Positions 1 through 53,643 of a stretch of 64,000 nucleotides of DNA are shown in pieces. The stretch comes from Ranitomeya imitator. Its lineage: Eukaryota. How positions within the stretch are numbered: the stretch's first letter is position 1; each line of letters opens with the position of its first letter. The DNA lies in contig NC_091290.1 of the NCBI RefSeq assembly GCF_032444005.1, positions 7,626,001 through 7,690,000 of the forward strand, given 5' to 3'. The notes beneath the pieces are model-generated. The model was given only the letters and a program-made list of their open reading frames with translations, did no database searches and was not told the DNA's origin. The position numbers and the translations under genes are program-made.

Positions 1-355
1 CCCTGGTGTCCATAAAAGATACGATCTATTGAGATACAAAATAGATTATCCTGAAGGGAAAGTGTAAAGAAACAGCACAGAAAAGCCAGAAGTCTCAAAA
101 ATGGTGACACAAACCAATTTTTTTTTTTTTCACCTACTGATATGGTAAAATAAAACGTGTATGTGGCTGGTTAGTAGCAATCGCAATGAGCCGGAGAAAC
201 AATATTAATATTTATTATTATTATTATTATGTAAGTTTCCATTCACTGCTGGAGAGGTTATAAAGTGAGGGCCGTCCCCTTCCGCTCGCTGCAGATTCCC
301 ATCGTTCACAATGTCGTCCTGTCGGTTTCTTCCTGATTCCTCTTCTTCCCATCAG

Positions 356-462
356 ATGGCGTTCCCTGTTCTCAGAATCCGAGCGCGGCCATAAAGAGCT
401 GGATCCACTACAATAAGGAGGAGCGGGAGGGATTCTCCGAGGTGCTGATCTCCAGCCTGAAG
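356..462 (+). CDS. KBTBD4: KBTBD4 penultimate coding exon (end of BACK region)
   Basis: Polypyrimidine tract plus CAG acceptor at 353-355 and AAG|GTAGGA donor at 463. Translates (D)GVPCSQNPSAAIKSWIHYNKEEREGFSEVLISSLK, matching human DGVPCSQNP...WINFNKEERE...SLK from recall. Ends in phase 0 and joins EIGENVHIY at 7193. Confidence 0.93.
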
Positions 463-553
463 GTAGGAACAGTCCACAGTGGAATCGTCACAGCACAACG
501 GTTTACTTTTTGCTACACTTCCATAAGTCATTATCGCTAGTGTTAGGACAGGC

Positions 554-958
554 AGAGCAACCGTGATAGAAAGGTGTCAGGACACGCAGAGCAACCGTGA
601 TAGAAAGGTGTCAGGACACGCAGAGCAACCGTGATAGAAAGGTGTCAGGACACGCAGAGCAACCGTGATAGAAAGGTGTCAGGACACGCAGAGCAACCGT
701 GATAGAAAGGTGTCAGGACACGCAGAGCAACCGTGATAGAAAGGTGTCAGGACACGCAGAGCAACCGTGATAGAAAGGTGTCAGGACACACAGAGCAACC
801 GTGATAGAAAGGTGTCAGGACACGCAGAGCAACACAGCTATGATAGAAAGGTGTCAGGACACGCAGAGCATCGCAGCTGTGATAGAAAGGGGTCAGGACA
901 TGCAGAGCATCACAGCTGTGATAGAAAGGTGTCAGGACACGCAGAGCATCACAGCTCC
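554..958 (+). repeat. Minisatellite, 34-bp unit AGAGCAACCGTGATAGAAAGGTGTCAGGACACGC changing to a 39-bp variant at the 3' end
   Basis: Unit starts at 554 and 588 (period 34). The last copies have the 39-bp form that gives the 13-aa repeat in ORFs 767/801. Confidence 0.95.
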
Positions 959-1494
959 CTGTCTGTGCAGCTGCAGACCTGTCTCATTGCCTGTGGAAAG
1001 CTGCTACAATGGACACCTTATCAGACGTGGAGCGATGGATGTAGTTGCCCCTTCTGGTGAATCCGGTTGTCCTTCATGTGGAGCTCGGGTGCGGTGCTTC
1101 CCTGTTGAAGGTGCGGGACCACCCGGTATGTACGGAGCCACACGGCCTCATATAATGTAGCTGGTTCTCATGTTGTCCGCCATCATATCTAGTAGCCACA
1201 ATCTGCCTCGCGCTTCTTTTCATCTCCTTTACACTTGGTGACATCAGGGATGGTGATTTCCCTACGTGGCGCCATGTTCTGCTCCTCGGATCATTTTCAC
1301 ATCGATTTCCCGGGGCTTCTCCTACTTGTGTCCTGGACGTCGGCAGCAGAGTCAGGGGTCTGGATGTGTGGGGTCTGTACACACACTACTAACATAAAGT
1401 TAGGGACACTTGGCTTTTGGGTGAAATTTATGGAAACTGTAAAGTTCCTGCTACAGTGATCTTTTATCCTGTAAGTCGGGCATTAAGTAGAACG

Positions 1495-3026
1495 AATAAC
1501 TTGTCCTGTGGCCTTCAGCATCAATTACAGCCGACATCATCTGCTGCTAACAAGTGGAGTTATTGTCGCTCGGACATTGCGTCCCACTCTTCTTGTAGCG
1601 CGGCCCTCCGGTCATTGAGGTTCTAGGGTACAGAGTTATGAGCCTCTACATGGTGACCCAGAGGTATTCTGTGTGATTCAGGCCAGGAGAAAGTGTGGAC
1701 TGCTTCATCTGAGGTCCCCCCAGGCTCCATCAGCTGGTCCCTAATGATGCGACCTCGATGAGATGGAGCATGGCCGTCCATGAAGATGACCTTAGGCCGG
1801 TGTCTGTGCATAGCTACAATCAGTGGATTAATGACGTTATTCCCGTAGTAGTGGCCAGTGTAGGGCCGTTCTGTATGACTAGACCATGTAACCACCACCA
1901 AAGCCTCGTTTGGTGACCACAGTGGCTGATGCACAGCGCACTCCTTGAAGTCTCCAACATCATTGGCGGCCATCTTTTGTGCTCAGCGTGAACAGAGTCT
2001 CATCAGTGAACAGCGCTGAGGCCACTAGTCCCTCATCCTGCGTAGATGTTCCCTGGCCCATGGTGGTGCGGTCAGGTACGTTGCCGGTCGTCTAGCACAA
2101 AGACCACGCTGATGTGAATGGTTTTGAATGGTCTGACCCTTGGGCGCCTCTCCCGTCCCTTACATGTGCGGCGTTCATCATCCGGGTCTGAAGGGCATCG
2201 TTCACAATGAAGCAGTCATTAGTGGAGGATGTGGCAGAGGACGTCCACGTCTGTGACTCTTCCGATCTCTCTTTTCACCGGCTGATGACTCTGTGACGCT
2301 CTGAACCCAGTGGCCACTTCTCTGCCTTTCTGTGACTCTTCCCGTCTCTGTAGTCATGGCTGATGACTCTGATGCTCAGTGATCACTTCTCTGCCTTTCT
2401 GTGACTCTTCCAGTCTCTGTAGTCATGGCTGATGACTCTGATGCTCAGTGGCCACTTCTCTGTCTTTCTGTGGCACTTCCAGTCTCTGTAGTCACGGCTG
2501 ATGACTCTGATGCTCAGTACTTCTCTGTCTTTCTGTGGCACTTCCAGTCTCTGTAGTCACGGCTGATGACTCTGACACTCGGAGCTCAGTGGCCACTTCT
2601 CTGCCTTTCTGTGACTCCTCCCGTCTCTGTAGTCACGGCTGATGACTCTGATGCTCAGTACTTCTCTGCCTTTCTATGGCTCTTCCAGTCTCTGTAGTCA
2701 CGGCTGATGACTCTGATGCTCAGTACTTCTCTGCCTTTCTATGGCTCTTCCAGTCTCTGTAGTCACGGCTGATGACTCTGTGACGCTCAGTGGTCACTTC
2801 TCTGCCTTTCTATGGCTCTTCCAGTCTCTGTAGTCACGGCTGATGACTCTGTGACGCTCAGTGGTCACTTCTCTGCCTTTCTATGGCTCTTCCAGTCTCT
2901 GTAGTCACGGCTGATGACTCTGACACTCGGAGCTCAGTGGCCACTTCTGTCTGAGCACATCCTTCCTGAGGCCTCATGATGGTGACGTCCTGTGGGATCA
3001 GCTGTTCGGTGTCGTCTTGGTCTCAT
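1495..3026 (-). pseudogene. Tc1 transposase pseudogene (frameshifts and stops), split by an internal minisatellite
   Basis: The - strand reads ATGAGACCAAGACGACAC at 3026, then segments resembling CSQTEVATELRV, RGLCARRP, WAREHLR, ALFTDE (first catalytic D), FMDGHAPSHRGRII (second D region), the SPDLNxxE-LW motif, ALQEEWDAM and AVIDAEGHRTSY. Confidence 0.85.
2280..2950. repeat. Minisatellite, about 10 copies of 65-78 bp, derived from the Tc1 HTH coding region
   Basis: GGCTGATGACTCT recurs at about 2280, 2358, 2427, 2496, 2561, 2637, 2702, 2767, 2838 and 2909. The reverse complement encodes YRETGRVTERQRSG/VATELRV pieces. Confidence 0.92.
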
Positions 3027-3639
3027 GATGATGACGACTGTTTAATGCCAATTCTAGTTGACCCCTGAACAGTCGCACATGTGCGTTCTGTGGATCCTGT
3101 GTTGCTGGAAACTGCTTATTACTAGAGCAGGAAGGAGCGGCCATTGCCCAGCTGGACAGCCGTATTTGTGACTGACCCTGTCTGTACGTCGCCTCTGCTA
3201 TCACAAACCGCCATGTTGTGCTCACACATCACGACCGCCCTCCGCAGAGAAACCGACCACAGGACGGAGACGACGGCCGCAGCCATTCCTCACACTGCTG
3301 AGGTAAAGTGAAAGCTGAGCCCTGATTGGTTGTTATGGGTAATACACAGTACCACTTGGTCTTGATGGAGGCCCCGTAAGTGTCATCCTGTACAGACCGC
3401 ACAGAGGAAACGTGCCCCCCGCGCCCCCATGTATATGTACAATAAATGTGAAGTAAATGGAGAAAGGTATGTGCCCCCTCCACATTCACTTACTGGATCT
3501 ATTCTGACCTCCTACTCTACATCCATAGACATTAAAGAAGTTCTCCACGATGGGGAAAAAAAAATGACCCCAGTTATGTAATAGAAATGGCAGCCGCTCC
3601 TAGTCATGGGTCAGGACGGTCTGCAGTCTTTAGAAGCAC

Positions 3640-3880
3640 CGCTCCTGAGACCTGCGCCTCACTGACAGAGGAACTGTATGGCACTGGTGAGCGGCTGGAG
3701 ACGGGAAAATAAAAATCTCCTCCTTGGCCAACTGAACACAGAGGACTGAGGCCGGACAATAAAAAATCCTCAGTCAGCCGAGTAGATTTCTTTTCCTGTC
3801 ACCTCCCGTCTTCATCCGCTCACCCGTGTTGTGCTCTTACCATTCAGCTCCTCTGTCAGTTGAGGCGCAGGTGTTGGGAG
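3640..3880. mobile_element. MITE-like inverted-repeat element (Kolobok/T2-like left end TTAA|AGAAGTTCTCCAC at about 3534)
   Basis: ACCTGCGCCTCACTGACAGAGGA (about 3651-3673) is inverted as TCCTCTGTCAGTTGAGGCGCAGGT (about 3849-3872). No matching right terminus found. Confidence 0.45.
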
Positions 3881-4046
3881 CTGTCTCTTCAGACCTCAGC
3901 CTGACTTGTCAATTTTTATTTTTTTTAGAATGAGCTATTCTAATTTTCACATTAAAAAAATAAAGTTTAATTTGAAAATTATCAAGCAATATCTGTTCAC
4001 TTTTTTTTTGTTTGTTTTTTCTTTTTTCCCCTAATGGTTATATAAG

Positions 4047-4121
4047 GAGGAAGAAATAGACGAGGATGTGGAAGACTTCATTTTTGAGTACTCTGAATCA
4101 GACACTGATGAATATGTTGAA
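4047..4121 (+). CDS. Nested gene, exon A (acidic: EEEIDEDVEDFIFEYSESDTDEYVE)
   Basis: TAAG| acceptor after a T-rich tract, 75 nt (25 codons), GAA|GTAGGT donor, phase 0 at both ends. Confidence 0.7.
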
Positions 4122-4218
4122 GTAGGTGTTTTGTTTTTTTTTATTTTTTATTATGAAGCCATCCTATATGTTTTACCTTCCAAACACCGTTGTTTTTATT
4201 TCTCTTGTGTAATAACAG

Positions 4219-4296
4219 GAAAGTTCAGAGGAATATGAAGAAGCACCTGACCGTAAGCATGCGGCCATGATCCGCGTCGAGAGAGAGGGTGAACTC
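4219..4296 (+). CDS. Nested gene, exon B (ESSEEYEEAPDRKHAAMIRVEREGEL)
   Basis: CAG| acceptor at 4216-4218, 78 nt, CTC|GTGAGG donor, phase 0. Flanked by 97-nt and 103-nt T-rich introns. Confidence 0.7.
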
Positions 4297-4361
4297 GTGA
4301 GGTTTCACTAAATTTATTTGTAATATTTTTACACTTTTTTTTTTTTCAAAGAAATGTAATT

Positions 4362-4398
<37 letters not shown>

Positions 4399-4399
4399 G

Positions 4400-4758
4400 C
4401 AGTTCCGGGCTCAACTCCAGAAACGTGTAGAGGAAAACAACCTCCGTACCCCATGGTGCCTCCAGAATGACCCACTATGGGGCCTGGGTGAGGAACGGCC
4501 GCTCCCGCCGCCCGATCCTAAAGGAAGACTGCAGAACACAAACTGGTGTCAGTGCGGGCATTGTTCCATCATGCCTCATGTAGCGGAAAGCGTCTGCTGC
4601 CGAGAGGTTCCCGCCATTAACAGATTCCTAGAAAACGAGTCTTGTGTTACGAGACACATGGACTTTGCCGGCTTCATACTGTCCAGAGACCTTCTCGTTC
4701 AGATGCTTCAGTTCTCCACCAAATTGACAGCGTCAAATTTTGCAGAAAAGGAAAATGG
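4400..4758 (+). CDS. Nested gene, exon C: P2X7 ballast/KolX-like Cys-rich domain, N-half
   Basis: Long poly-T plus TAG| acceptor. Open frame QFRAQLQKR...RLQNTNWCQCGHCSIMPHVAESVCCREV...CVTRHMDF...EKENG. The WCxCGxC..E..CCRE and CVTxHxxF motifs match the P2X7 C-terminal ballast family. GG|GTAAAT donor, phase 2. Confidence 0.85.
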
Positions 4759-4990
4759 GTAAATTTTTTTTTTTTATTTTTTTTGCATATTTTATTTTTA
4801 CCCTGTATCCCATAATGTGATATTGCTGTTCCATCAATATAAAATAATCCGTACAAAAATACCTGTTAAATCTGTTAACTAACAATGGGGCAGAAGTCTC
4901 TGGCTGTCGGCGCATGCTGCAGGTTGCTGAGCCACCTGATGCTTTATTACATGGAGCACAGGGATGGACACGCTGATTGATATTATTTAT

Positions 4991-5700
4991 TTAATAATAA
5001 TAATAATAATAATTTTTATTTATATAGCGCCAACATATTCCGCAGCGCTTTACAAATTATAGAGGGGACTTGTACATACAATAGACATTACAGCATAACA
5101 GAAATACAGTTCAAAACAGATACCAAGAGGAGTGAGGGCCCTGCTCGCAAGCTACAAACTATGAGGAAAAGGGGAGACACGAGAGGTGGATGGTAACAAT
5201 TGCTATAGTTATTCGGACCAGCCATAGTGTAAGGCTTGGGTGTTCATGTAAAGCTGCATGAACCAGTTAATTAATTTATTTATTTTTTTTTTTTTTTAAT
5301 ATAGGCCACACAGGGATCGTTAGGTTAATGCATTGAGGCGGTAGGCCAGTCTGAACAAATGAGTTTTTAGGGCACGCTTAAAACTGTGGGGATTGGGGAT
5401 TAATCGTATTATCCTAGGTAGTGCATTCCAAAGAATCGGCGCAGCACGTGTAAAGTCTTGGAGACGGGAGTGGGAGGTTCTGATTATTGAGGATGCTAAC
5501 CTGAGGTCATTAGCGGAGCGGAGGGCACGGGTAGGGTGGTAGACTGAGACCAGAGAGGAGATGTAGGGTGGTGCTGAGCCATGGAGTGCTTTGTGGATGA
5601 GGGTAGTAGTTTTGTACTGGATTCTTGAGTGGATGGGTAACCAGTGTAATGACTGGCACAAGGTAGAGGCATCGGTGTAACGGTTGGTGAGGAATATGAT
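4991..5700 (-). mobile_element. 5'-truncated L2/CR1-clade LINE (RT C-terminus, 3' UTR and (ATT)n tail) inside the nested gene's last intron
   Basis: ORF 5320-5703(-) carries LHWLPI..RIQYK..LRSAND..F..AAP.LWNALP..IR..FKRALKTHLF. The 3' end has the AGCGC-loop-GCGCT stem, AATAAA and a TTA/ATT repeat tail at about 4991-5052. Confidence 0.88.
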
Positions 5701-5721
5701 CATTTATTTTTTTTCCTCCAG

Positions 5722-5917
5722 GCACCTTCGGGAGGCAGCCTATCGCAGATTCACTACCATGATCTACGGATTTCTCGGGAATAGACGCGGATTAACGGTG
5801 CCTTCGTGTGTGGTCCGTAACATTCGGGAGACGTTCCCGAGCCCCGACGGAAATTATCCCAGCTGTAAATGGTATTGGGAGTCCGTGTCCGGTCCGCCGG
5901 CCGACGTGGCTTTCTAA
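5722..5917 (+). CDS. Nested gene, exon D: ballast/KolX-like domain C-half and stop
   Basis: TTTTCCTCCAG| acceptor; its first G completes the phase-2 GG codon. Reads HLREAAYRRFTTMIYGFLGNRRGLTVPSCVVRNIRETFPSPDGNY...*, compared with P2X7 LRHCAYR...LPSCCRWRIRKEFPKSEGQY from recall. AATAAA follows at about 6237. Confidence 0.85.
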
Positions 5918-6893
5918 GTGATGTCCCGAGCGATCAGACGTGCGCGGCACTTTATCTCTTCACTGTTATGCGGTTTTATATTTCATATGGGAAAAAAAGT
6001 TAACATTTTTCTAAGTTTGTTTAAAAAAAATAAAACGGGGTTTTTTCGGTGTTTTCATAATTTTCCCTTCATGGCTGTGTTATTTGGGATATTATTAGGT
6101 GTTGGTTAAGTTTTGTTTTTATATGAAAAGTTTAAAAAAACCACAAAAAAAAAACCCCTTAAGTTATCGCACTGTATCAGGACAAAGGTTGTATATTTGC
6201 TGTGTTAGATGTTTGTTGTAATTTTTCACAAAGTTGAAATAAAAATTTGTTAAAGAAAAGTGAAAGATCTTTGTTTTTTTTTGTTTTTTATGAGTATTGT
6301 AGTGATTTATCTTAAAGTGGTTGTGACGTCCTCACCTTGATTTGTCATATTGCTATCTGACCTTTACCCTGCTGAGAAACTACCGCCATTATGAGACCTG
6401 TGCCGTAAAGGGTTCACTGTTAGGCAGCTGGTACAGAGGAGCGAGTGGATTTGCAGGTCCCTAGTCCAGCGGCCATGTCAGTCATCCATGGCCGGCATAA
6501 GGGAGCCCTGTGAGCCACCTCCTTTCTGCCAACATGCCCGGATCCTCTTCGGATTTGTAGGTGCAGCACAATGTCCTAGTGGTGGTGTGACGGCCATATT
6601 ATGTAGCGCCAGGATGGTTAATCAGAAGAAGGACCCCGGGGATGCAGGTAGGAGGTGATTCACAGGGCTCCTGTGCGGCAGCCATGGCTTCTGGATGAAG
6701 GTCATGCAGATTGCTTGGCTCCTCTATAGTAGGTGGTACATGTAACCTCCAAATAACGAAAAGCAAAACTGATGCTCTGCATGTTCTGACACCTTTCTAT
6801 GATCACTGTCGCCAGTTTACCAAATCTCCAGGGAGAAATCTTACCCCTTAGACCCATCAGAGGCCGCTCATACAGCTGAATCGGGTTTGTTGC

Positions 6894-6938
6894 TTTGCAC
6901 TGAGGAGGGGCAAACACCCCGAAACAGGTGTCTGCAAA
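6894..6938 (+). ncRNA. Type I hammerhead ribozyme (minimal, Penelope/retrozyme-like), sense to the KBTBD4 intron
   Basis: TTTGCA (6894-99) CTGAGGA (6900-06) GGGG-CAAACA-CCCC (6907-20) GAAA (6921-24) C-AGGT-G T C (cleavage triplet GUC, 6930-32) TGCAAA (6933-38). Complete CUGANGA/GAAA core with stems I, II and a 2-bp stem III. Confidence 0.85.
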
Positions 6939-7192
6939 CAGATTCTGGTTTGGCTCTTATCCTGTGACAAGGCTCGTTAAAGAGTTAAGGATTGCTCCAT
7001 CCAATAAATCCTATACGTGGCTGTTGCGAGCGTTCTTTCCCTCTGGGAGGGCGCTCATTTTCGTAGAGCCTCTGACATATAATTGCTGGGACCTTGTTTT
7101 TTTTTTTTCAGAGTAAATCCCTTTTAATGACCTCCGCTTTTATGTTTTCAGAAAATCTTTTAAAGCGTTTCCTTGTGTATTTTGTCTTTAAG

Positions 7193-8053
7193 GAAATCGG
7201 GGAAAACGTGCACATCTACCTGATCGGGAAGGAGGAATCTCGCACGCACTCCATTGCCGTCTCTCTCCACTGTGCGCAGGACGACTCTATAAGTGTAAGC
7301 GGGCAGAACAGTCTGTGCCACCAGATCACTGCCGCGTGCAAACATGGCGCCGACCTCTACGTGGTAGGAGGGTCCATACCCCGTCGAATGTGGAAATGTA
7401 ATATGGAGACCATGGACTGGGAGCGATGCGCACCGCTTCCCCGGGACCGTCTGCAGCATACGCTGGTGTCCGTGCCCGGCAAGGATGCCATCTACTCCCT
7501 GGGGGGTAAGACCTTGCAGGACTCGCTGTCTAACGTGGTGATTTACTACCGAGTATCGGACAATGTCTGGACAGAGACTAGTCAGCTGGAGGTCAGCATC
7601 TCCGGGGCGGCGGGGGTGAACCTGAACGGGCTCATCTACCTACTGGGAGGCGAGGAGAACGACCTGGACTTCTTCACCAAACCCTCTCGTCTCATCCAGT
7701 GTTTCGATACCACCACAGAGAAGTGCCACGTCAAACCCTACCTGCTGCCGTTTGCGGGTCGAATGCACGCGGCCGTTCACAAGGACCTGGTGTTCATCGT
7801 CGCGGAGGGGGACTCGCTGGTGTGTTATAACCCGCTGCTGGACAGCTTCACCCGGCTGTGCCTGCCCGAGGTCTGGAGCTCGCGGCCAGCGCTCTGGAAA
7901 ATCGCCAGCTGCAACGGCTGCATCTACGTGTTCCGGGATCAATACAAGAAAGGGGACGCCAACACCTTCAAGTTAAACCCCGCCACCTCGGTGGTGACCG
8001 TCACCAGCGGCATTCGCTTTCTGCTTACCAATCTGCAGTTTTTACTGGCATGA
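7193..8053 (+). CDS. KBTBD4: KBTBD4 last coding exon (Kelch repeats)
   Basis: TTTAAG| acceptor at 7192. EIGENVHIYLIGKE..THSIAVSLHC..GGSIPRRMWKC..DRLQHTLVSVPGKDAIYSLGGK..LLTNLQFLLA* is nearly identical to vertebrate KBTBD4. The ORF-track start at 7094 is intronic read-through. Confidence 0.97.
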   Translation, partial: EIGENVHIYLIGKEESRTHSIAVSLHCAQDDSISVSGQNSLCHQITAACKHGADLYVVGGSIPRRMWKCNMETMDWERCAPLPRDRLQHTLVSVPGKDAIYSLGGKTLQDSLSNVVIYYRVSDNVWTETSQLEVSISGAAGVNLNGLIYLLGGEENDLDFFTKPSRLIQCFDTTTEKCHVKPYLLPFAGRMHAAVHKDLVFIVAEGDSLVCYNPLLDSFTRLCLPEVWSSRPALWKIASCNGCIYVFRDQYKKGDANTFKLNPATSVVTVTSGIRFLLTNLQFLLA

Positions 8054-8854
8054 TGCTTTGTCGGACGACTGGAGACGCCGCTCGTTGCTTTGGTTCTTGG
8101 ATTTAAAAAAAAAATATATATGAAAATCTGGTCGTAAAGAAGAAAGCGGGATGGGACTGCCAGCCTAAAATGGTGGCATTAGTGAAGCGTCCTCTGCCGT
8201 CTTCTTGCCGCTGCTGAATCTATGCTTAGATGCTTTTGTTTAGAGTCAAGACAAACCAGTCCCATCCACATCCAGAATCCTAAATCTTGATTGTGGTGAT
8301 ACATCACAAGCTCCAATCAATGGGGACGTCGGGAGGATAAAATAGGGAAAAAAAGGCAGAAACCTTTGACTGGGCGCAGTTCCCCTCGGCTCCACTAGGT
8401 GGCTGATGGTTGGCGCGTGTGGACTTTCTGTAGGCCGCAGAGGAGACCAGGGCCCATCACACCCTCCGCTGATCACTTCTGCCTTTTTCTACAGTCGTTG
8501 GGGTCCTGGCACCCGAGTCCCACGTAAAAACTTCTGACAATTGGCAGCGATCTATCTGACAGCGCCTCGTTAGCAGCAGCCGTTTATGCCCGTCTGACGA
8601 TGATGCGCTATTGGGAAATGCCAGAAGAAAAATGAACTATTATGTAGATCAGGGTTTTGTGTTAAACTTACTTTGTTTTTTTTTAATATCACAATCCATA
8701 TTAAAAAAATCAAAATATGAAATCTTTGAAAAAAATTTTGCCCACTGGGACTATTCCTGTTGTTTTGAAGAAATCCACATGTACATGATCTGCAATGAAC
8801 AAACAGATGCTGTGTTTTGTATTGAGGCATCTAATGAGCGTGTGCAAAGCTCAT

Positions 8855-9485
8855 TGTACAGGAGGGGGAGGTGAGCTGTGACAACACAGGATGCACCATT
8901 CACAATAGGTGATATCACAGCTCACCTCCTCCTCCTGTACAATGACTGATAACACCTCTATATACAGTAGATATCAGTCATTGTACAGGAGGAGGAGGTG
9001 AGCTGTGACATCACCTATTGTGAATGGTGGATCCTGTGTTATCTACTGTATATAGGTGTTATTGGTCATTGTACAGGAGGAGGTGAGCTGTGATATCATG
9101 TATTGTGAATGGTGGATCCAGTGTTATCTACTGTATATAGAGGTGCTATCAGTCATTGTACAGGAGGAGGAGGTGAGCTGTGACATCACCTATTGTGAAT
9201 GGTGGATCCTGTGTTATCTACTGTATATAGGTGTTATTGGTCATTGTACAGGAGGAGGTGAGCTGTGATATCATGTATTGTGAATGGTGGATCCAGTGTT
9301 ATCTACTGTATATAGAGGTGTTATCAGTCATTGTACAGGAGGAGGAGGAGGTGAGCTGTGACATCTATTGTGAATGGTGGATCCAGTGTTATCTACTGTA
9401 TATAGAGGTGTTATCAGTCATTGTACAGGATGAGGAGGTGAGCTGTGACATCTATGGTGAATGGTGGATCCTGTGTTATCAATCA
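8855..9485. repeat. Minisatellite, 87-90-bp unit (about 6 copies), preceded by one inverted copy
   Basis: GTCATTGTACAGG at 8977, 9065, 9152, 9240, 9327 and 9417. A reverse-complement unit lies at about 8882-8970. Confidence 0.9.
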
Positions 9486-10643
9486 TTGTAAACCTTATGA
9501 TGATAATGAATCTGCTGACAACTCTTCCTTAAAGGACATGAAGTATTAGTCTAAACAGCCACCGTAATCAGTGCGTAAATTGTCCGATTTATTAATTTTA
9601 TTTTTTTCAGGATTATTAAAAAAAAAAAAACAACCTATTTCAGAACCTTGATGTACAGAGCAGGTCATTTTCTGATGCCGCGTTCCCTGTGAGGTTTTTG
9701 TCTGATGACCTATTGCTGTGGGGTCCGAGCCGTCTGGAAGCCTCATGATCAGCCAATGACTATAATGGAAGCAGCGGGTTCAGAGCGGCAGGGATCCGGT
9801 GTGATCTGCCTCTATGGCGGGCGGTAGGACTTCACATCCATATCCTATATACCTCCTGCACTTCACTACATGGCACAGGTTGTAATAATGATCATTGGAG
9901 GCCACACTTAGGGGCTGTGCACAGGCTGGAGGCAGATTTTATGCTCCGTATGAGGCCATACTCACATATAGAAATATATGCAGCTTTATTCTGCACCACA
10001 AAACACAATGGTAAACTGCTCAGAATATTGTTAATTAATGCATAAAGGCCGGGGTTCTGCACTTAAAAGCACAACTGTGTTGTTGTTTTTCACATTCCAT
10101 TATCCGGTTCCCCATTAAAGCCTACAATGAAAAAAATATGGCGTGGGCTCCCCTGTATTTTTGATAACCAGCCAGGCAAAACTCACAGCTGTCTGCTTTA
10201 GCATGGCTGGTTATCAAAAAGAGAGGTGTCCCCACGCTGTTTTTTCTTTAATTTAAAGAAGTAATTAAAAACAGCGTGGAGACGCCTCCATTTTTAACAA
10301 CCAGCCTTGCTAAAGCAGACAGCTGGGGGGGCTGGTATACTCAGGCTGGTAAGGGGCCATGGAAACTGCCCCCCCAGCCTAAAAATAGTAGCCCACAGGC
10401 GCCCCAGAAAAGGCACGTCTATTAGATGCGCCAATTCTTACGCTTTGCCCGGTTGTTGTCCCATCAGCTAAACAATCGGACCCGGTGGCTCCGGTGTAAT
10501 ATCCTCCAGTTTTTTTTTTATTGGTTAATGTCCGTAGCCCCTAACGCTATCTCTATAGAGTGCACCGGCAGATGTAGACCCCCAGCAGGAGTAGAGGATG
10601 TGTGGAAGCCCGGAGGATATAAACCATTGCCAAAAACCCCACC

Positions 10644-10762
10644 GGAGCGGCTCGTGACCGGAGCGGCTCGTGACCGGAGCGGCTCGTGACCGGAGCGGCT
10701 CGTGACCGGAGCGGCTCGTGACCGGAGCGGCTCGTGACCGGAGCGGCTCGTGACCGGAGCGG
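10644..10762. repeat. 16-bp tandem repeat GGAGCGGCTCGTGACC (about 7 copies) within a dispersed-repeat-like segment
   Basis: Direct reading. It explains the 16-aa periodic ORFs at 10518-10818. Confidence 0.9.
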
Positions 10763-11496
10763 GGTGAAGGCTGCCCCTGTGAGCTGCCAATACAAAACTC
10801 TAACCGGAAGAATTTCAATTAAAAAGTGATTTTAAATAAAGAAATGTCATTCACTACGCTGCACGTATCGAGAGAATCGCACGTTCACACCCAGGCGAAA
10901 AATTCCGGGTATTAAAGGGATTGTCCACGGCGAAACATCTCTCTAAATGTGCTTGTAGTAAGGCATACTCGCCCAACCGCTGCTCGTCCAATGCTGCCCC
11001 GTCCCCCAATGGTTCAATGTAGACAGATGTGACCGCTGCAGCCCATCAGAGACCACCCTTTCAAAATGCATCCACCCTCTGCCTATAGAGGAGTGTGACG
11101 GTAAGTCGTGGCCTGAAGCCGTTCAGATGACAAGGAGGCTCGAGTCCGCCGGAGCTCTTTGTTCTGGCCCATACACGGGGGGGGGTCCTGAGTGGGCTTT
11201 TCTGGATTTACGCTGACGGTTGTCGGCCGCTCTCCCTCTGATAAACTTTTCCTATTTTTATAACTTTTGGCAAATGTGGTTCAAAAAACTTTAGTGGAAT
11301 TGCACATAGTTGGGGGGACAGAAAACTGCGACTGGTAAATGAGGGGCGCAATATCGAAGACCCCATAACACCTCACACTCAAGGTTTTATCTCTTACCAA
11401 AGGGTCTCTTATGACTGGCAAGTTGGATCTTGACAAAATAAAAAGTATCATTTTTATCAAAGGATAAGCACCAATATCAGGGATACGTAGAGAATG

Positions 11497-12740
11497 GAGA
11501 AGAGACATAAGGATTACAGAGCTCACTGACTGATCACTGGTAACTCATTCTGCTATGTACAGTGATACATAAAGGATGGAGAAGACACATAAGGATTACA
11601 GAACTCACTGACTGATCACTGGTAACTCATTCTGCTATGTACAGTACTGCATAAAGGATGGAGAAGAGAAATAAGTACTACAGAGCTCACTGACTGATCA
11701 CTGGTAACTCATTCTGCTATGTACAGTACTGCATAAAGGATGGAGAAGAGAAATAAGTACTACAGAGCTCACTGACTGATCACTGGTAACTCATTCTGCT
11801 ATGTACAGTACTGCATAAAGGATGGAGAAGAGAAATAAGTACTACAGAGCTCACTGACTGATCACTGGTAACTCATTCTGCTATGTACAGTACTGCATAA
11901 AGGATGGAGAAGAGAAATAAGTACTACAGAGCTCACTGACTGATCACTGGTAACTCATTCTGCTATGTACAGTACTGCATAAAGGATGGAGAAGAGAAAT
12001 AGGTACTACAGAGCTCACTGACTGATCACTGGTAACTCATTCTGCTATGTACAGTACTGCATAAAGGATGGAGAAGAGACATAAGGATTACAGAGCTCAC
12101 TGACTGATCACTGGTAACTCATTCTGCTATGTACAGTGATACATAAAGGATGGAGAAGAGACATAAGGATTACAGAGCTCACTGACTGATCACTGGTAAC
12201 TCATTCTGCTATGTACAGTACTGCATAAAGGATGGAGAAGAGAAATAGGTACTACAGAGCTCACTGACTGATCACTGGTAACTCATTCTGCTATGTACAG
12301 TACTGCATAAAGGATGGAGAAGAGAAATAAGTACTACAGAGCTCACTGACTGATCACTGGTAACTCATTCTATGTACAGTGATACACAAAGGATGGAGAA
12401 GAGAAATAAGTACTACACAGCTCACTGACTGATCACTGGTAACTCATTCTGCTATGTACAGTGATGCATAAAGGATGGAGAAGAGAAATAAATACTACAG
12501 AGCTCACTGACTGATCACTGGTAACTCATTCTGCCTTGTACAGTGATGCATAAAGGATGGAGAAGAGAAATAAGTACTACAGAGCTCACTGACTGATCAC
12601 TGGTAACTCATTCTGCTATGTACAGTGAAACATAGAGAATGGAGAAGAGACATAAGGATTATAGAGCTCACTGATCACTGGTTACTCCTTCTGCTATGTA
12701 CAGTGATGCATAGAAGATGGAGAAGACAAATAAGGATTAC
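11497..12740. repeat. Minisatellite, 82-bp unit (about 15 copies), between the KBTBD4 and PTPMT1 3' ends
   Basis: CAGAGCTCACTGACTGATCACTGGTAACTCATTCTGCTATGTACAG recurs with period 82 (11681, 11763 and so on). Confidence 0.95.
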
Positions 12741-18093: not shown

Positions 18094-20250
18094 TTACAAG
18101 ATTGGGAGCAGGATGGGGCATTATTATAAGAGGATCAGGATGGGGCATTACTATTAGATGGGGTCCGGGATGGGGCATTATTATAAGATGGGGTCCAGGA
18201 TGGGGCACTACTATAAGATGGGGAGCAGGATGGGGCACTACTATAAGATGGGGAGCAGGATGGGGCATTACTATAAGATGGGGAGCAGGATGGGGCATTA
18301 CTATAAGATGAGGTCCAGGATGGGGCATTACTATTAGATGGGGTCCAGGATGGGGCATTACTATTAGATGGGGTCCAGGATGGGGCATTACTATAAGATG
18401 GGGAGCAGGATGGGGCATTATTATAAGATGGGGTCCAGGATGGGGCATTACTATAAGATGGGGAGCAGGATGGGGCATTACTATAAGATGGGGAGCAGGA
18501 TGGGGCATTACTATAAGATGGGGAGCAGGATGGGGCATTACTATAAGATGGGGAGCAGGATGGGGCATTACTATAAGATGGGGTCCAGGATGGGGCATTA
18601 CTATAAGATGGGGAGCAGGATGGGGCATTACTATAAGATGGGGAGCAGGATGGGGCATTACTATAAGATGAGGTCCAGGATGGGGCATTACAATTAGATG
18701 GGGTCCAGGATGGGGCATTACTATAAGATGGGGAGCAGGATGGGGCATTATTATAAGATGGGGAGCAGGATGGGGCATTACTATAAGATGGGGTCCAGGA
18801 TGGGGCATTACTACAAGATGGGGACCGGGATGGGGCATTACAAGATGGGGTCCGGGATGGGTCATTACTATAAGATGGGGAGCAGGATGGGGCATTACTA
18901 CAAGATGGGGAGCGGGATGGGGCATTACTATAAGATGGGGAGCGGGATGGGGCATTACTACAAGATGGGGAGCAGGATGGGGCATTACTATAAGATGGGG
19001 TCCAGGATGGGGCATTACTACAAGATGGGGTCCAGGATGGGGCATTACTACAAGATGGGGTCCAGGATGGGGCATTACTACAAGATGGGGTCCAGGATGG
19101 GGCATTACTACAAGATCGGGAGCAGGATGAGGCATTACTATAAGAAGAGGACCGGGATGGGGCATTACTATAAGATGAGGACCGGGATGGGGCATGACTA
19201 CAAGATGAGGACCGGGATGGGGCATGACTACAAGATGGGGACAGGGATGGGGCATTACTACAAGATGGGGACCAGGATGGGGCATTACTATAAGAAGAGG
19301 ACCGGGATGGGGCATTACAAGATGGGGTCCGGGATGGGGCATTACTATAAGATGGGGAGCAGGATGGGGCATTACTACAAGAAGAGGACCAGGATGGGGC
19401 ATTACTATAAGATGGGGAGCAGGATGGGGCATTACAAGATGAGGTCCGGGATGGGGCATTACTACAAGATGGGGTCCGGGATGGGGCATTACTATAAGAT
19501 GGGGAGCAGGATGGGGCATTACTACAAGATGAGGTCCGGGATGGGGCATTACTACAAGATGAGGTCCGGGATTGGGCATTACTATAAGATGGGGAGCAGG
19601 ATGGGGCATTACTACAAGAAGAGGACCAGAATGGGGCATTACTATAAGATGAGGAGCGGGATGGGGCATTACTATAAGTTGGGGAGCAGGATGGGGCATT
19701 ACTACAAGATGAGGTCCGGGATGGGGCATTACTACAAGATGAGGTCCGGGATGGGGCATTACTATAAGATGGGGAGCAGGATGGGGCATTACTACAAGAA
19801 GAGGACCAGGATGGGGCATTACTATAAGATGAGGTCCAGGATGGGGCATTACTATAATATGGGGAGCAGGATGGGGCATTACTACAAGATGAGGTCCAGG
19901 ATGGGGCATTACTACAAGATGAGGTCCAGGATGGGGCATTACTACAAGATGAGGTCCGGGATGGGGCATTACTATAAGATGGGGTCCAGGATGGGGCATT
20001 ACTATAAGATGGGGAGCCGGATGGGGCATTACTATAATATGGGGAGCAGGATGGGGCATTACTACAAGATGAGGTCCAGGATGGGGCATTACTACAAGAT
20101 GAGGTCCGGGATGGGGCATTACTACAAGATGAGGTCCGGGATGGGGCATTACTATAAGATGGGGAGCAGAATGGGGCATTACTACAAGACGGGGTCCGGG
20201 ATGGGGCATTACTACAAGATTGGGAAACTACAAGATGGGTACATTACTAT
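18094..20250. repeat. Minisatellite, 30-bp unit GATGGGGCATTACTATAAGATGGGGAGCAG (about 70 copies), PTPMT1 intron 1
   Basis: Direct periodicity, seen as the 10-aa MGHYYKMGSR pseudo-ORF. A hAT-like terminus CAGGGGTCTCAAAC lies at 17832 upstream. Confidence 0.96.
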
Positions 20251-21038
20251 GATGTTAATTGTGTGACAAAATTACTGTATGTGGCCAATTAGGGGACACA
20301 AAAAGGAAATTAAAATAAAATTGCAAAAATTTAAAAGAAAAAAAATCAAAATAAAGTATGAAAATTATCTTTGGACACTAAAACTGTTTTATGTATAAAC
20401 TAAAGAAGACAAAAAAAGTGCATGTTACCGCCGACCCTGTAATGACCCCTATATATCTACCATAACCCAGACATTTAAATAAAATAAAAGCCAAAAATGT
20501 TCACAAAAATTATCAGAAGGTGCATAGAAAATCCAATATGGTATCATTAAAAGTGTCACCTCAGACCCCAAATTCACATTTTGTCTATGTGCTGCGCGTT
20601 TACCCTCCGAGGGCGAGACCCCTGGCCCAGGTGGGCGCACATGCAGTAAATATCGGGGTCTGGGTATTTTTTCCTCAAACTGAACGACAATTTTGGTGCC
20701 TGTGATGGCGACGTTCTGTCCTTACAAGAAATGTCGCCGGTTGACGCGACAAGAAAACCCTGAAAAGCCGTTATCAGTTGGATTATTTTGGTCGCAGCAA
20801 TGGCGGTACCGTGCGGGTTACATCACGACAATGCAAAGAAAGAAACTAACAGAAAATGCCTCCACATCCCGCTGGTGACAGTGGCAGGCGGCCCAGGAGC
20901 CTCCTCCTCTCTGGTGGCCATTAGTGGCCAATATTCCCATACAGCGCATGTGCCGAGACACGATCGGCTCCTGGAGCCGTGAATGGCGGACCTACAGTCC
21001 ATCACATCCCCTCACTGCGCAGCCGCCACTACTTACAC

Positions 21039-21430
21039 TGCGCATGCGCGCTTACCTTATCGCTCATTCCCCGGAAGGGCAACGCTCCAAGAATAACCGT
21101 CTCGTCGATCCTGTCATACCATTTCCGGCGGGATATCTTCTCCATGACAACGTTATACAGCAGGGTCGGGTAGAATAAAACTCGCGTGGCCACTGACTGT
21201 AAACTCATGATCCTGGCAGAGCGTATTAATTGCGACCCGCGGAAACTGTATCCACCATCTTTGTCGCTGGCACTTCCGCTTCAAGGTGAGAGTGGACGGA
21301 AGTGGAGTGCCGCCATCTTATGTAAGGGCAGTGGTAAAAATCGGCCATGTTGGATGCGGGAATAGTGCAGCATTAGTAATGGCCGGGATTTGGGAGATAA
21401 CAGAAGACTGGCGGGAAATCATTGGCGGGT
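21039..21430. promoter_or_regulatory. PTPMT1 CpG-rich promoter region: NRF1, ETS/GABP, YY1, E2F-like and CCAAT motifs
   Basis: TGCGCATGCGC 21039-21049, CACTTCCG 21271-78, CGGAAGTG 21297-304, GCCGCCATCTT 21309-19, GGCGGGAAA 21410-18, ATTGG 21421-25. Confidence 0.7.
21056..21208 (-). CDS. PTPMT1: PTPMT1 exon 1 (start codon; frame not in the ORF track)
   Basis: ATG at 21208, [54 protein letters not shown]|GTAAGC donor. The four exons total 570 nt (189 aa plus stop). Confidence 0.95.
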
Positions 21431-21629
21431 TCTAATGAGACAATTGACGTTTTGGTGATTAGAACTCCACTTTCTTGGCAGATTCTGACTAAAAGCTGTG
21501 AATTCTACCGTTTACTGACGTCAGTCACGGATATTAACCAGAGTGTGGTAGCTGCGCTTTACTAGCAGATTTTGCTGCTTCTTCACTGCTGATTTTATCC
21601 CTGTGGTAAAGTCCATGGTGACAATCCGC

Positions 21630-24600
21630 AGAATGAGTGCCGCCACTCTCACCGTCCACACCGCGGGTCACTGGTCTCAGAATGCCGCCGCTCTCACCGT
21701 CCGCACCACGGGTCACTGGTCTCAGAATGCCGCCACTCTCACCGTCCGCACCACGGGTCACTGGTCTCAGAATGCCGCCACTCTCACCATCCGCACCGCG
21801 GGTCACTGGTCTCAGAATGCCGCCGCTCTCACCGTCCACACCGCGGATCACTGGTCTCAGAATGCCGCCACTCTCACCGTCCGCACCGCGGGTCACTGGT
21901 CTCAGAATGCCGCCACTCTCACCGTCCGCACCGTGGATCACTGGTCTCAGAATGCCGCCACTCTCACCGTCCGCACCGCAGATCACTGGTCTCAGAATGC
22001 CGCCACTCTCACCGTCCGCACCGCAGATCACTGGTCTCAGAATGCCGCCACTCTCACCGTCCGCACCGCGGGTCACTGGTCTCAGAATGCCGCCGCTCTC
22101 ACCGTCCGCACCGCGGGTCACTGGTCTCAGAATGCCGCCACTCTCACCGTCCGCACCGCAGATCACTGGTCTCAGAATGCCGCCACTCTCACCGTCCGCA
22201 CCGCGGGTCACTGGTCTCAGAATGCCGCGACTCTCACCGTCCGCACCGTGGATCACTGGTCTCAGAATGCCGCCACTCTCACCATCCGCACCGCGGGTCA
22301 CTGGTCTCAGAATGCCGCTGCTTTCACCATCCGCACCGTGGATCACTGGTCTCAGAATGCCGCCACTCTCACCATCCGCACCGCGGGTCACTGGTCTCAG
22401 AATGCCGCTGCTTTCACCGTCCACACCGTGGATCACTGGTCTCAGAATGCCGCCACTCTCACCGTCCGCACCACGGATCACTGGTCTCAGAATGCCACCG
22501 CTCTCACCGTCCGCACCGTGGATCACTGGTCTCAGAATGCCGCTACTCTCACCGTCCGCACCACGGGTCACTGTTCTCAGAATGCCGCCGCTCTCACCGT
22601 CCGCACCGCAGATCACTAGTCTCAGAAGGCCGCCGCTTTCACCGTCCGCACCACGGGTCACTGGTCTCAGAATGCCGCCGCTCTCACCGTCCGCACCGTG
22701 GATCACTGGTCTCAGAATGCCGCCGCTCTCACCGTCCGCACCGTGGATCACTGGTCTCAGAATGCCGCCGCTCTCACCGTCCGCACCGCAGATCACTGGT
22801 CTCAGAATGCCGCCGCTCTCACCGTCCGCACCGCATATCACTAGTCTCAGAAGGCCGCCGCTTTCACCGTCCGCACCACGGGTCACTGGTCTCAGAATGC
22901 CGCCGCTCTCACCGTCCGCACCACGGATCACTGGTCTCAAAATGCCGCCGCTCTCACCGTCCGCACCGCGGGTCACTGGTCTCAGAATGCCACTGCTTTC
23001 AACGTCTGCCCTGCGGGTCACTGGTCTCAAAATGCCGCCGCTCTCACCGTCCGCACCGTGGATCACTGGTCTCAGAATGCCGCTGCTTTCAACGTCCGCC
23101 CCGCGGGTCACTGGTCTCAGAATGCCGCCGCTCTCACCGTCCGCATCGCGGGTCACTGGTCTCAGAATGCCGCCGCTCTCACCGTCTGCACTGCGGATCA
23201 CTGGTCTCAGAATGCCGCCGCTCTCACCGGCCGCACCGCAGATCACTGGTCTCAGAATGCCGCCTCTCTCACCGTCTGCACCGCGGATCACTGGTCTCAG
23301 TATGCCGCCACTCTCACCATCTGCACTGCGGATTACTGGTCTCAGTATGCCGCCACTCTCACCGTCTGCACCGCAGGTCACTGGTCTCAGAAGGTCACCG
23401 CTTTCACCGCCTGCACCATGGGTCACTGGTCTCAGAATGCCGCTGCTCTCAGAATGCTGCCGCTCTCAGCGTCCGCACCGCGGATCACTGGTCTCCGAAT
23501 GCCGCCGCTCTCACTGTCCGCACCGCGGATCACTGGTCTCAGAATGCCGCCGTTCTCGCCTTCCGCACTGCTGGTCACTGGTCTCAGAATGCCGCCACTC
23601 TCACCGTCCGCACCGTGGATCACTGGTCTCAGAATGCCGCCGCTCGCACCGGCCGCACCGCAGAGCACTGGTCTCAGAATGCCGCCGCTCTCACCGTCCG
23701 CACTGCGGATCACTGGTCTCAGAATGCCGCCGCTCTCACCGTCCGCACCGCGGATCACTGGTCTCAAAATGCCGCCGCTCTCACCGTCCGCCCCGCGGGT
23801 CACTGGTCTCAGAATGCTGACGCTCTCACCGTCCGCACCGCAGATCACTGGTCTCGGAATGCCGCCGCTCTCACCGTCCGAATCGCGGGTCACTGGTCTC
23901 AGAATGCCGCCGCTCTCACCGTCTGCACCGCGGATCACTGGTCTCAGAATGCCGCCGCTCTCACCGGCCGCACCGCAGATCACTGGTCTCAGAATGCCGC
24001 CGCTCTCACCGGCCGCATCGCGGGTCACTGGTCTCAGAATGCCGCCGCTCTCACCGTCCGCATCGCGGGTCACTGGTCTCAGAATGCCGCCGCTCTCACC
24101 GTCTGCACCGCGGATCATTGGTCTCAGAATGCCGCCGCTCTCACCGGCCGCACCGCAGATCACTGGTCTCAGAATGCCGCATCTCTCACCGTCTGCACCG
24201 CGGATCACTGGTCTCAGTATGCCGCCGCTCTCACCATCTGCACTGCGGATCACTGGTCTGAGTATGCCGCCACTCTCACCGTCTGCACCGCAGGTCACTG
24301 GTCTCAGAAGGTCACCGCTTTCACCGTCTGCACCGCAGGTCACTGGTCTCAGAAGGTCACCGCTCTCACCGTCTGCACCGCAGGTCACTGGTCTCAGAAG
24401 GTCACCGCTTTCAGCGTCTGCACCGCGGATCACTGGTCTCAGAATGCCGCCGCTCTCACTGTCCGCACCGCGGGTCACTGGTCTCAGAATGCCGCCACTC
24501 TCAATGTCTGCCCCGCGGATCACTGGTCTTAGAATGCCACCGCTCTCACCGTCTGCCCCGCAGGTCACTGGTCTCAGAATGCCGCCGTTCTCGCCTTCCG

Positions 24601-53247: not shown

Positions 53248-53361
53248 TTAAGATGGGTCAGCAATCTGTGGCACTTAGGCTGCTGCAAAATTATCACTTC
53301 CATCATGGCCTCATAACTGCTGCATGTTGGGTGTTGCAGATATATATATATATATATATAT

Positions 53362-53570
53362 TTCACAAAAATAGGCAGCACTCCAAATTCTTAGAAAAAT
53401 GTGCAGGGTTTTATTATACCCACATCTCCGTGCAACGTTTCGGCTCTGAATGAGCCTTTCTCAAGGCTTGAGAAAGGCTCATTCAGAGCCGAAACGTTGC
53501 ACGGAGATGTGGGTATAATAAAACCCTGCACATTTTTCTAAGAATTTGGAGTGCTGCCTATTTTTGTGAA
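53362..53570. repeat. Perfect palindrome (104-bp arms, 1-nt spacer) carrying Penelope-like hammerhead cores; (TA)n on the left
   Basis: 53362-53465 is the exact reverse complement of 53467-53570. The right arm begins CTTGAGAAA-GGCTC-ATTCA-GAGCC-GAAACGTTG. Confidence 0.92.
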
Positions 53571-53643
53571 GTATATTGACCAAGAATAACCAGTGGACAG
53601 GTTGTTTTGGGCCTTGCACCCGAAGATAAGTATTGGATTTGTG

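What the first reader, a model, noticed from the sequence alone, without database searches (positions are those of the whole stretch)
6878..7008. Canonical hammerhead ribozyme, sense-oriented, 260 nt upstream of the KBTBD4 Kelch exon
Seen: an intact type I fold with stem I TTTGCA/TGCAAA, CUGAGGA, stem II GGGG/CCCC with loop CAAACA, GAAA, stem III AC/GU and predicted cleavage after C6932 (GUC). A distal helix GAATC (6878-82)/GATTC (6941-45) extends stem I across an internal loop, and AATAAA follows at 7003. Established: minimal type I hammerheads with a 2-bp, near-palindromic stem III occur in Penelope-like LTRs and amphibian retrozymes and usually cleave as dimers. Here the palindrome is imperfect (ACAGGTGT versus ACAGCTGT) and only one copy is present. 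Inference: if active, it would cut KBTBD4 pre-mRNA between the nested gene and the last exon. It could then bias last-exon choice or end nested transcripts; if the G-G mismatch attenuates it, that may be why the insertion is tolerated.
Basis: partly seen in the sequence, partly recalled or inferred. Interest (0 to 1): 0.82.

Follow-up and report, generated by a model that had tools for sequence, protein, structure and literature searches.

The report
Solo hammerhead retroelement copy in frog intron
A complete self-cutting hammerhead RNA motif does sit in the last intron of the poison-frog KBTBD4 gene, but it is one stray copy of a mobile-element family present thousands of times in this genome, and nothing shows that it controls the gene.

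Summary
Window 6894-6938 (+) carries every conserved hammerhead core nucleotide and three helices. It matches Rfam Hammerhead_1 end to end at 25 bits, below the curated cut-off of 34.

It is not a chance motif and not a private invention of this locus. In a DNA run of the same species, the roughly 50-nt core has summed contig depth about 3000 times single-copy depth. The flanks are 67-77% like the family's flank consensus. The genome is Ranitomeya variabilis, where this scan has already logged hundreds of hammerhead retrozyme and Penelope-type elements, some of them intronic.

Only one copy lies here, with no tandem partner and no Penelope ORF. The central G-G in helix III is the family's majority state, not a local lesion. 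Folding predicts a competing structure about 10 kcal/mol more stable than the catalytic fold. KBTBD4 mRNA is spliced across the intron in three studies. The element is very likely shared with R. imitator and is absent from Xenopus and Spea.

One thing stays open. RNA contigs cover only about 6627-6920 of the intron and do not resume after the ribozyme. This fits cleavage in vivo but does not prove it.

Verdict: an ordinary member of a known kind, of low interest.

The parts
6894..6899 (+). Helix I, 5' strand (UUUGCA)
   Evidence: Rfam alignment; 6 bp found by the descriptor scan
6900..6906 (+). Catalytic core box C3-A9 (CUGAGGA)
6907..6920 (+). Helix II GGGG/CCCC with loop 2 CAAACA (Rfam consensus loop is CAAAUA)
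   Evidence: pairing probability 0.98-0.99 in every folding context
6921..6932 (+). G12 A13 A14, then helix III (A15.1-U16.1, C15.2-G16.2, loop AGGU 6926-6929) and C17. The predicted cut is between 6932 and 6933
   Evidence: Self-dimer helix III energy is -1.6 kcal/mol, against -11.1 for a perfect palindrome
6933..6938 (+). Helix I, 3' strand (UGCAAA)
6861..6968 (+). Stretch homologous to the genome-wide hammerhead repeat family. The core 6890-6942 is at least 90% like thousands of copies. The flanks are 20/30 and 23/30 identical to the family's flank consensus and form a long outer helix I
   Evidence: depth, loose-end consensus; flank identities; folds
6884..6892 (+). GUUUGUUGC: a local competitor for the 3' strand of helix I. 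It is used in the predicted minimum-energy fold in place of 6894-6899
6627..6920 (.). Intron segment represented by 100%-identical low-depth contigs in three RNA-like runs. The strand is unknown. The 3' limit is masked by the repeat
   Evidence: table 8, records 9, 16, 20
463..7192 (+). KBTBD4 last intron (GT at 463, AG at 7191-7192), host of the nested P2RX7_C gene and of the hammerhead
7193..8053 (+). KBTBD4 last (Kelch) exon, 100% identical to Ranitomeya variabilis KBTBD4
7003..7008 (+). AATAAA hexamer, with no evidence of use
   Evidence: No RNA contig lies in 6984-7189

Best explanation
This is a solo copy of a canonical metazoan type I hammerhead carried by a very abundant non-coding retroelement family of the poison frog Ranitomeya variabilis. 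The family is of the non-LTR retrozyme or Penelope pseudo-LTR kind. The copy was pasted in sense orientation into the last intron of KBTBD4, 260 nt before the Kelch exon, before R. variabilis and R. imitator split (inferred). It rides along as a passenger. It has no partner ribozyme in cis, a 2-bp helix III and a strong competing local fold, so it is expected to cleave slowly if at all. The intron is removed normally. Any cleavage would mostly hit an intron that is already spliced out or already committed to splicing, and would be neutral for KBTBD4.
For: The motif is complete and matches Rfam over the full length of the model. It is not a chance hit.

Family membership:
- In DNA run X1 the summed depth over 6874-6955 is 18,500-21,100, against 5.9-7.6 for the single-copy flanks.
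- The matches end at 6890/6891 and at 6926-6942, with varied continuations.
- The flanks are 67% and 77% identical to the family's loose-end consensus.
- Earlier notes of this scan list hundreds of hammerhead retrozyme and Penelope elements in this genome, including intronic solo copies.

Published background:
- Metazoan type I hammerheads have a 6-bp helix I, a 4-bp helix II and a 1-2-bp helix III. They cleave poorly as monomers (PMC4209133; PMC7229834).
- About 44% of X. tropicalis retrozyme-related copies overlap introns (bioRxiv 10.64898/2026.07.22.740005).

State of this copy:
- It is single. There is no other copy in the window and no tandem similarity.
- The catalytic fold lies 9.8 kcal/mol above the minimum-energy fold, and helix I has about zero pairing probability. 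With family-consensus flanks the gap is 6.1 kcal/mol and the probability 0.12.
- The spliced junction from 462 to 7193 is seen in three studies.

Age and distribution:
- The distance from the end of the nested CDS to the end of the KBTBD4 CDS is 2136 bp both here and in R. imitator.
- There is no hammerhead core pattern in the orthologous X. tropicalis and Spea loci.
Against: In three RNA-like runs the only intron segment with contigs is about 6627-6920. It runs into the ribozyme, and no unique contig resumes after 6939. This is what an RNA ending at the cut site would look like.

The core has stayed at least 90% identical to the family while the flanks have not. This could also be read as local conservation.

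Nearest-neighbour folding ignores the loop-loop tertiary contacts that stabilise active hammerheads.

The element's boundaries and target-site duplication could not be defined. The only candidate, a 12-mer at 6860 and 7047, is expected 0.33 times by chance.
Confidence: 0.75

Rival explanations
1. The ribozyme is active in vivo on KBTBD4 intron RNA. It cuts at 6932|6933 and leaves an upstream fragment protected by a 2',3'-cyclic phosphate, seen as the 6627-6920+ contigs, while the downstream 260 nt are degraded. This need not affect the mRNA: it could simply speed intron turnover.
For: RNA-like contigs from three studies cover only 6627/6653/6673 to 6878/6899/6920 at 100% identity and depth 2.4-5.2. 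None covers 6300-6626 or 6984-7189, although the DNA run has contigs over both stretches. The X4 contig ends at 6920, which is the last 31-mer not shared with the family. No unique contig restarts after 6939, so most molecules seem to end between 6921 and about 6950. All core nucleotides are intact. Other family RNAs are present at depth 38-113 in the same runs and could act as dimer partners in trans (inference).
Against: Contigs cannot show RNA ends or strand, and depth is low. The 5' limit near 6627 has no explanation in this model. Amphibian hammerheads of this architecture are weak as monomers (PMC7229834). The predicted self-dimer helix III is only -1.6 kcal/mol. The catalytic fold is disfavoured by about 10 kcal/mol. 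The segment is not unusually structured (z -0.43).
Confidence: 0.15
2. The hammerhead has been taken over by the host as a regulator. Cleavage between the nested P2RX7_C gene and the Kelch exon would tune last-exon use, or terminate transcripts of the nested gene.
For: The motif is in sense orientation, 260 nt upstream of the 3' splice site and about 690 nt downstream of the AATAAA-rich end of the nested gene. The segment length is identical in R. imitator. For the CPEB3 ribozyme, the scission half-life matches the polymerase transit time to the next exon (PMC10919898 abstract).
Against: The motif is a family-consensus copy of a repeat present thousands of times. The spliced mRNA is the dominant form (depth 17-36 against 2-5). 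No alternative terminal exon or truncated isoform was found. AATAAA at 7003 is not covered by RNA. The motif is absent from Xenopus and Spea. Intronic copies are common in frogs.
Confidence: 0.04
3. The RNA segment 6627-6920 has nothing to do with the ribozyme. It would be an unannotated exon, an antisense transcript or a transposon-driven transcript that happens to overlap the motif.
For: The 5' limit varies between runs (6627, 6653, 6673). One contig carries 12 foreign letters before 6653 that occur nowhere in the window. The segment spans several unrelated repeat pieces, for example the 34-nt unit at 6768-6809.
Against: There is no canonical acceptor at 6626 or 6653 with a pyrimidine tract. 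No joints were reported. There is no tRNA-like or Rfam hit. No short KBTBD4 isoform was found.
Confidence: 0.06

Closest known systems
Canonical type I hammerheads of animal non-LTR retrozymes (newt satellite 2, axolotl HHR_Amex1/2, Xenopus families; Rfam RF00163)
   Same: Same core, a 6-bp helix I, a 4-bp helix II with a CAAAYA-type loop 2, and a helix III of A15.1-U16.1 plus one pair capped by a tetraloop. The copy number in an amphibian genome is very high and family RNAs are expressed (PMC7229834, PMC4209133).
   Different: There is one unit only, not a tandem array. The tetraloop AGGU is not palindromic, so the classical double-hammerhead helix III is nearly unpaired (-1.6 kcal/mol). The score is below Rfam's gathering cut-off.
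Hammerheads in pseudo-LTRs of Penelope-like elements
   Same: The ribozyme lies near the 3' end of a retroelement that is often 5'-truncated and scattered as solo fragments. Recent work derives animal retrozymes from these pseudo-LTRs (PMC8557442; bioRxiv 10.64898/2026.07.22.740005).
   Different: The typical metazoan Penelope motif is the 'min-HHR' without a helix III, whereas this one has the canonical three-helix form. No RT or GIY-YIG ORF and no second pseudo-LTR is nearby.
Conserved intronic ribozymes of amniotes (hammerhead HH9/HH10; CPEB3 HDV-like ribozyme)
   Same: A self-cleaving motif in sense orientation inside an intron of a protein-coding gene, a short distance upstream of an exon.
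   Different: Those are single-locus motifs conserved over long evolutionary spans. This one is a consensus copy of a repeat family and is absent from the orthologous intron of Xenopus and Spea.

Membership tests
Hammerhead ribozyme, type I (RF00163) | Conserved core C3 U4 G5 A6 N7 G8 A9, G12 A13 A14, A15.1-U16.1, H17 | tested here: met
   CUGAGGA at 6900-6906, GAAA at 6921-6924, U6931, C6932
Hammerhead ribozyme, type I (RF00163) | Three helices around the core, with helix I open-ended | tested here: met
   Helix I 6 bp, helix II 4 bp, helix III 2 bp with a tetraloop
Hammerhead ribozyme, type I (RF00163) | Score at or above Rfam's gathering cut-off (34 bits) | tested here: not met
   25.0 bits, E 9.5e-5 in a 61-nt search. 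Not reported in the larger searches
Hammerhead ribozyme, type I (RF00163) | Catalytic fold is thermodynamically accessible | tested here: inconclusive
   The catalytic fold lies 9.8 kcal/mol above the minimum-energy fold in context, and helix I has about zero probability. Tertiary contacts are not modelled
Hammerhead ribozyme, type I (RF00163) | Self-cleavage at H17 | not testable with these tools
   The only evidence is indirect: RNA contigs stop within the motif
Animal non-LTR retrozyme | Multicopy non-coding repeat family carrying a type I hammerhead | tested here: met
   Core depth is about 3000 times single-copy depth in DNA run X1, and the flanks are homologous to the family
Animal non-LTR retrozyme | Head-to-tail tandem units, each with a hammerhead (two or more) | tested here: not met
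   There is one motif in 64 kb and no tandem similarity. It would count as a 'monomer derivative'
Animal non-LTR retrozyme | Target-site duplication bounding the insert | tested here: inconclusive
   The only candidate is a 12-mer with 1 mismatch at 6860 and 7047. It is expected 0.33 times by chance, and its left copy lies inside family-homologous sequence
Penelope-like element | RT plus GIY-YIG ORF flanked by pseudo-LTRs | tested here: not met
   No such ORF lies in 1-12000. The neighbouring ORFs give only P2RX7_C or nothing in Pfam
Conserved (exapted) intronic ribozyme | Orthologous conservation beyond the lineage in which the repeat family is active | tested here: not met
   Absent from the X. 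tropicalis and Spea bombifrons KBTBD4 loci. Presence in R. imitator is inferred only from an identical segment length. DNA of the other dendrobatids was not retrievable

The most novel reading that the evidence does not exclude
The solo hammerhead cuts KBTBD4 intron RNA in vivo, perhaps helped in trans by abundant family RNAs. It would then define the 3' end of a discrete RNA of about 300 nt (6627-6932), giving a natural case of a retrozyme-derived ribozyme processing a host pre-mRNA or intron downstream of a nested gene.
Probability: 0.1. Interest if true: 0.55.

Novelty: new member of a known kind. Interest (0 to 1): 0.2.

Why it matters
As it stands it matters little. It adds one more intronic solo copy to a ribozyme-bearing repeat family already described in amphibians and logged many times in this genome. 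It does show that a sub-threshold Rfam score can hide a complete family-consensus hammerhead. If the RNA pattern, in which contigs run into the ribozyme and do not resume, reflects true cleavage, the locus would be a handy natural test of what a slow hammerhead does inside a spliced intron close to a 3' splice site.

Tried and rejected
- Rfam at gathering on the whole window, and at E-value threshold on 601 nt, gave nothing. Only the 61-nt search reported the hammerhead.
- An upstream degenerate second hammerhead or tandem unit is rejected. The Smith-Waterman score of 6560-6860 against 6861-7100 was 25, against a shuffle mean of 27.
- A tRNA-derived SINE head or other RNA family at 6570-6720 is not supported: ARAGORN and Rfam found nothing.
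- The idea that 6627-6932 is a specially structured, stable RNA is not supported (z -0.43).
- An alternative terminal exon or truncated KBTBD4 isoform is not supported. There is no good acceptor, no joints were reported, and no short Ranitomeya isoform is in the protein collection.
- The 12 foreign letters before 6653 in one contig are not in the window and stay unexplained.
- The orthologous intron DNA of R. imitator, D. tinctorius, P. terribilis and Anomaloglossus could not be fetched because the files were too large.
- Two Logan contigs with the Kelch exon reach only 135-177 nt into unalignable introns of more distant frogs.
- The search of earlier findings by sequence came back blank.

Full report
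**What is there.**
- Helix I is TTTGCA (6894-6899) paired with TGCAAA (6933-6938).
- The core box CTGAGGA lies at 6900-6906.
- Helix II is GGGG/CCCC closed by CAAACA (6907-6920).
- GAAA lies at 6921-6924.
- Helix III has two pairs (A6924-T6931, C6925-G6930) around AGGT.
- C6932 is the nucleotide before the predicted cut.

Rfam's type I hammerhead model RF00163 aligns from its first to its last position at 25.0 bits (E 9.5e-5) when only 61 nt are searched. That is below the curated cut-off of 34. The match was not reported in the whole-window search at gathering or in a 601-nt E-value search. The only irregular pair flagged in the Rfam alignment is the innermost pair of the model's loop-less 4-bp helix III, which is the central G-G.

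A descriptor scan of my own found exactly this one site in the window on both strands. It required helix I of at least 5 bp, the core boxes, helix II of at least 3 bp and helix III of at least 2 bp. In 20 Mb of Markov-random sequence it found one hit at those lax settings and none at this site's helix lengths. Chance is excluded for a 64-kb window.

**Gene context.**
- The ORF 7094-8053 contains the KBTBD4 Kelch exon. Its product is 100% identical to KBTBD4 of Ranitomeya variabilis.
- RNA contigs that start at 7190 carry the letters of window 441-459 upstream, so they are spliced.
- The previous exon is 355-462, followed by GT.
- The hammerhead is therefore in the 6.7-kb last intron (463-7192), in sense, 260 nt before the exon.
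- The same intron hosts a nested gene whose last exon (5684-5917) hits Pfam P2RX7_C.

**It is a copy of a very abundant family.** I laid contigs of a DNA run of the same organism on 6300-7500.
- The summed depth was 18,500-21,100 over 6874-6955, against 5.9-7.6 for the single-copy flanks.
- The matches begin at 6890/6891 and end between 6926 and 6942, and then continue into many different sequences.
- No alternative letter reaches 10% of depth anywhere in 6890-6942. This copy's core, including G6928, is therefore the majority sequence of the family.
- The 30-letter consensus of the foreign continuations is 20/30 identical to this locus upstream and 23/30 downstream. Homology thus extends at least over 6861-6968, with a long outer helix I as in the family.

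The scan's own index holds hundreds of notes on hammerhead retrozyme arrays (353- and 384-bp units), on Penelope pseudo-LTR hammerheads and on solo copies in this genome. One of them is in a HERPUD1 intron. I used these as leads only.

The literature gives the frame:
- Canonical metazoan type I hammerheads have a 6-bp helix I, a 4-bp helix II and a 1-2-bp helix III. They are poor cleavers unless two copies form a double hammerhead (PMC4209133; PMC7229834).
- Animal retrozymes derive from Penelope pseudo-LTRs. In X. tropicalis about 44% of their copies overlap introns (bioRxiv 10.64898/2026.07.22.740005).
- Penelope-type insertions are often 5'-truncated, with the ribozyme near the 3' end (PMC8557442).

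**State of this copy.**
- It is alone. There is no second motif in the window and no hidden tandem unit.
- No RT or GIY-YIG ORF is nearby.
- A target-site duplication could not be shown.
- In context, the catalytic secondary structure lies 9.8 kcal/mol above the predicted minimum. In that minimum, GUUUGUUGC (6884-6892) takes the 3' strand of helix I, and GCACU pairs with AGGUGU.
- Helix I has essentially zero pairing probability.
- With the family's consensus flanks the gap shrinks to 6.1 kcal/mol and helix I reaches probability 0.12. This copy therefore looks somewhat worse than its family. The model ignores tertiary contacts.
- A homodimeric helix III (ACAGGUGU with itself) is worth only -1.6 kcal/mol, against -11.1 for a perfect palindrome. 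Because this is the family's majority state, it is not a private attenuating mutation.

**Age and distribution.** DNA of other dendrobatids could not be fetched, but the gene tables help. In R. imitator the distance from the end of the nested P2RX7_C CDS to the end of the KBTBD4 CDS is 2136 bp, the same as here (5917 to 8053). The segment with the element is therefore very probably present there too. In Anomaloglossus the distance is 3062 bp. The X. tropicalis and Spea bombifrons loci were fetched. Their last introns (2756 and 779 nt) and the rest of both loci contain no hammerhead core pattern and no Rfam hit. The insertion is specific to this lineage.

**RNA evidence.** Three small, evidently cDNA-derived runs from three studies show the spliced exon at depth 17-36. 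They also show low-depth (2.4-5.2) contigs, identical to the window, over 6627-6878, 6653-6920 and 6673-6899. They have no contig in 6300-6626 or 6984-7189, although the DNA run has contigs over both stretches.

The segment includes 6710-6750, which is single-copy in DNA, so the RNA comes from this locus. The contig that reaches furthest ends at 6920. That is the last 31-mer not shared with the family, so the repeat hides the true 3' end. No unique contig resumes after 6939, so most molecules seem to end between 6921 and about 6950, a span that includes the predicted cut at 6932/6933.

This fits cleavage in vivo but does not prove it. Contigs show neither ends nor strand, and depth is low. The 5' limit near 6627 is also unexplained:
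- There is no good acceptor.
- There is no tRNA-like or Rfam feature.
- The segment has no unusual structure.
- No short KBTBD4 isoform was found.
- One contig carries 12 foreign letters that are absent from the window.

**Verdict.** The best reading is a solo, probably sluggish, family-consensus hammerhead of a retrozyme or Penelope-derived repeat, riding in an intron that is spliced normally (confidence 0.75). A real but inconsequential cleavage of intron RNA gets about 0.15. A host regulatory role gets about 0.04. The kind is well known, and the scan has met it many times in this genome on other DNA. Interest is low. The RNA pattern is the one point worth a look at raw reads.

Noticed in passing
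window 4047-5917 (last exon 5684-5917): The gene nested in the KBTBD4 last intron encodes a P2RX7_C (ballast) domain (Pfam PF20478, E 1.4e-8). A nested P2RX7_C gene is also annotated inside KBTBD4 of Ranitomeya imitator and Anomaloglossus baeobatrachus, so the nesting is shared across dendrobatoid frogs.
   Followed up: partly
window 566-951 and 6768-6809: There is a tandem array of a 34-nt unit (ATAGAAAGGTGTCAGGACACGCAGAGCAACCGT) near the start of the intron. A single inverted unit lies about 90 nt upstream of the hammerhead. The stretch 6751-6832 is itself repeated on the order of a thousand times in the DNA run.
   Followed up: partly
window 21500-29000: A large satellite of a 45-nt unit (more than 160 copies, 90-95% alike).
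   Followed up: no
window 53356-53576: A near-perfect palindrome: two 110-nt arms, 99% complementary, 1 nt apart.
   Followed up: no
window 6894-6931 (other loci seen through): In the RNA-like runs, other family members are present at depth 38-113. One is a 5.6-kb contig whose hammerhead core matches 6894-6931 and then diverges one nucleotide before the cut site. That copy lacks the 3' strand of helix I.
   Followed up: no
window 5320-5703 (-) and 1623-1973 (-): ORF remnants that look like transposon proteins (a LINE-like C-terminus and a DDE-transposase-like piece) but have no Pfam hit at E 0.01 or better.
   Followed up: partly
window 6486-6529 / 6644-6687: An inverted repeat of 44 nt (77% complementary), 114 nt apart. 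Its right arm coincides with the 5' limit of the intron RNA contigs.
   Followed up: no
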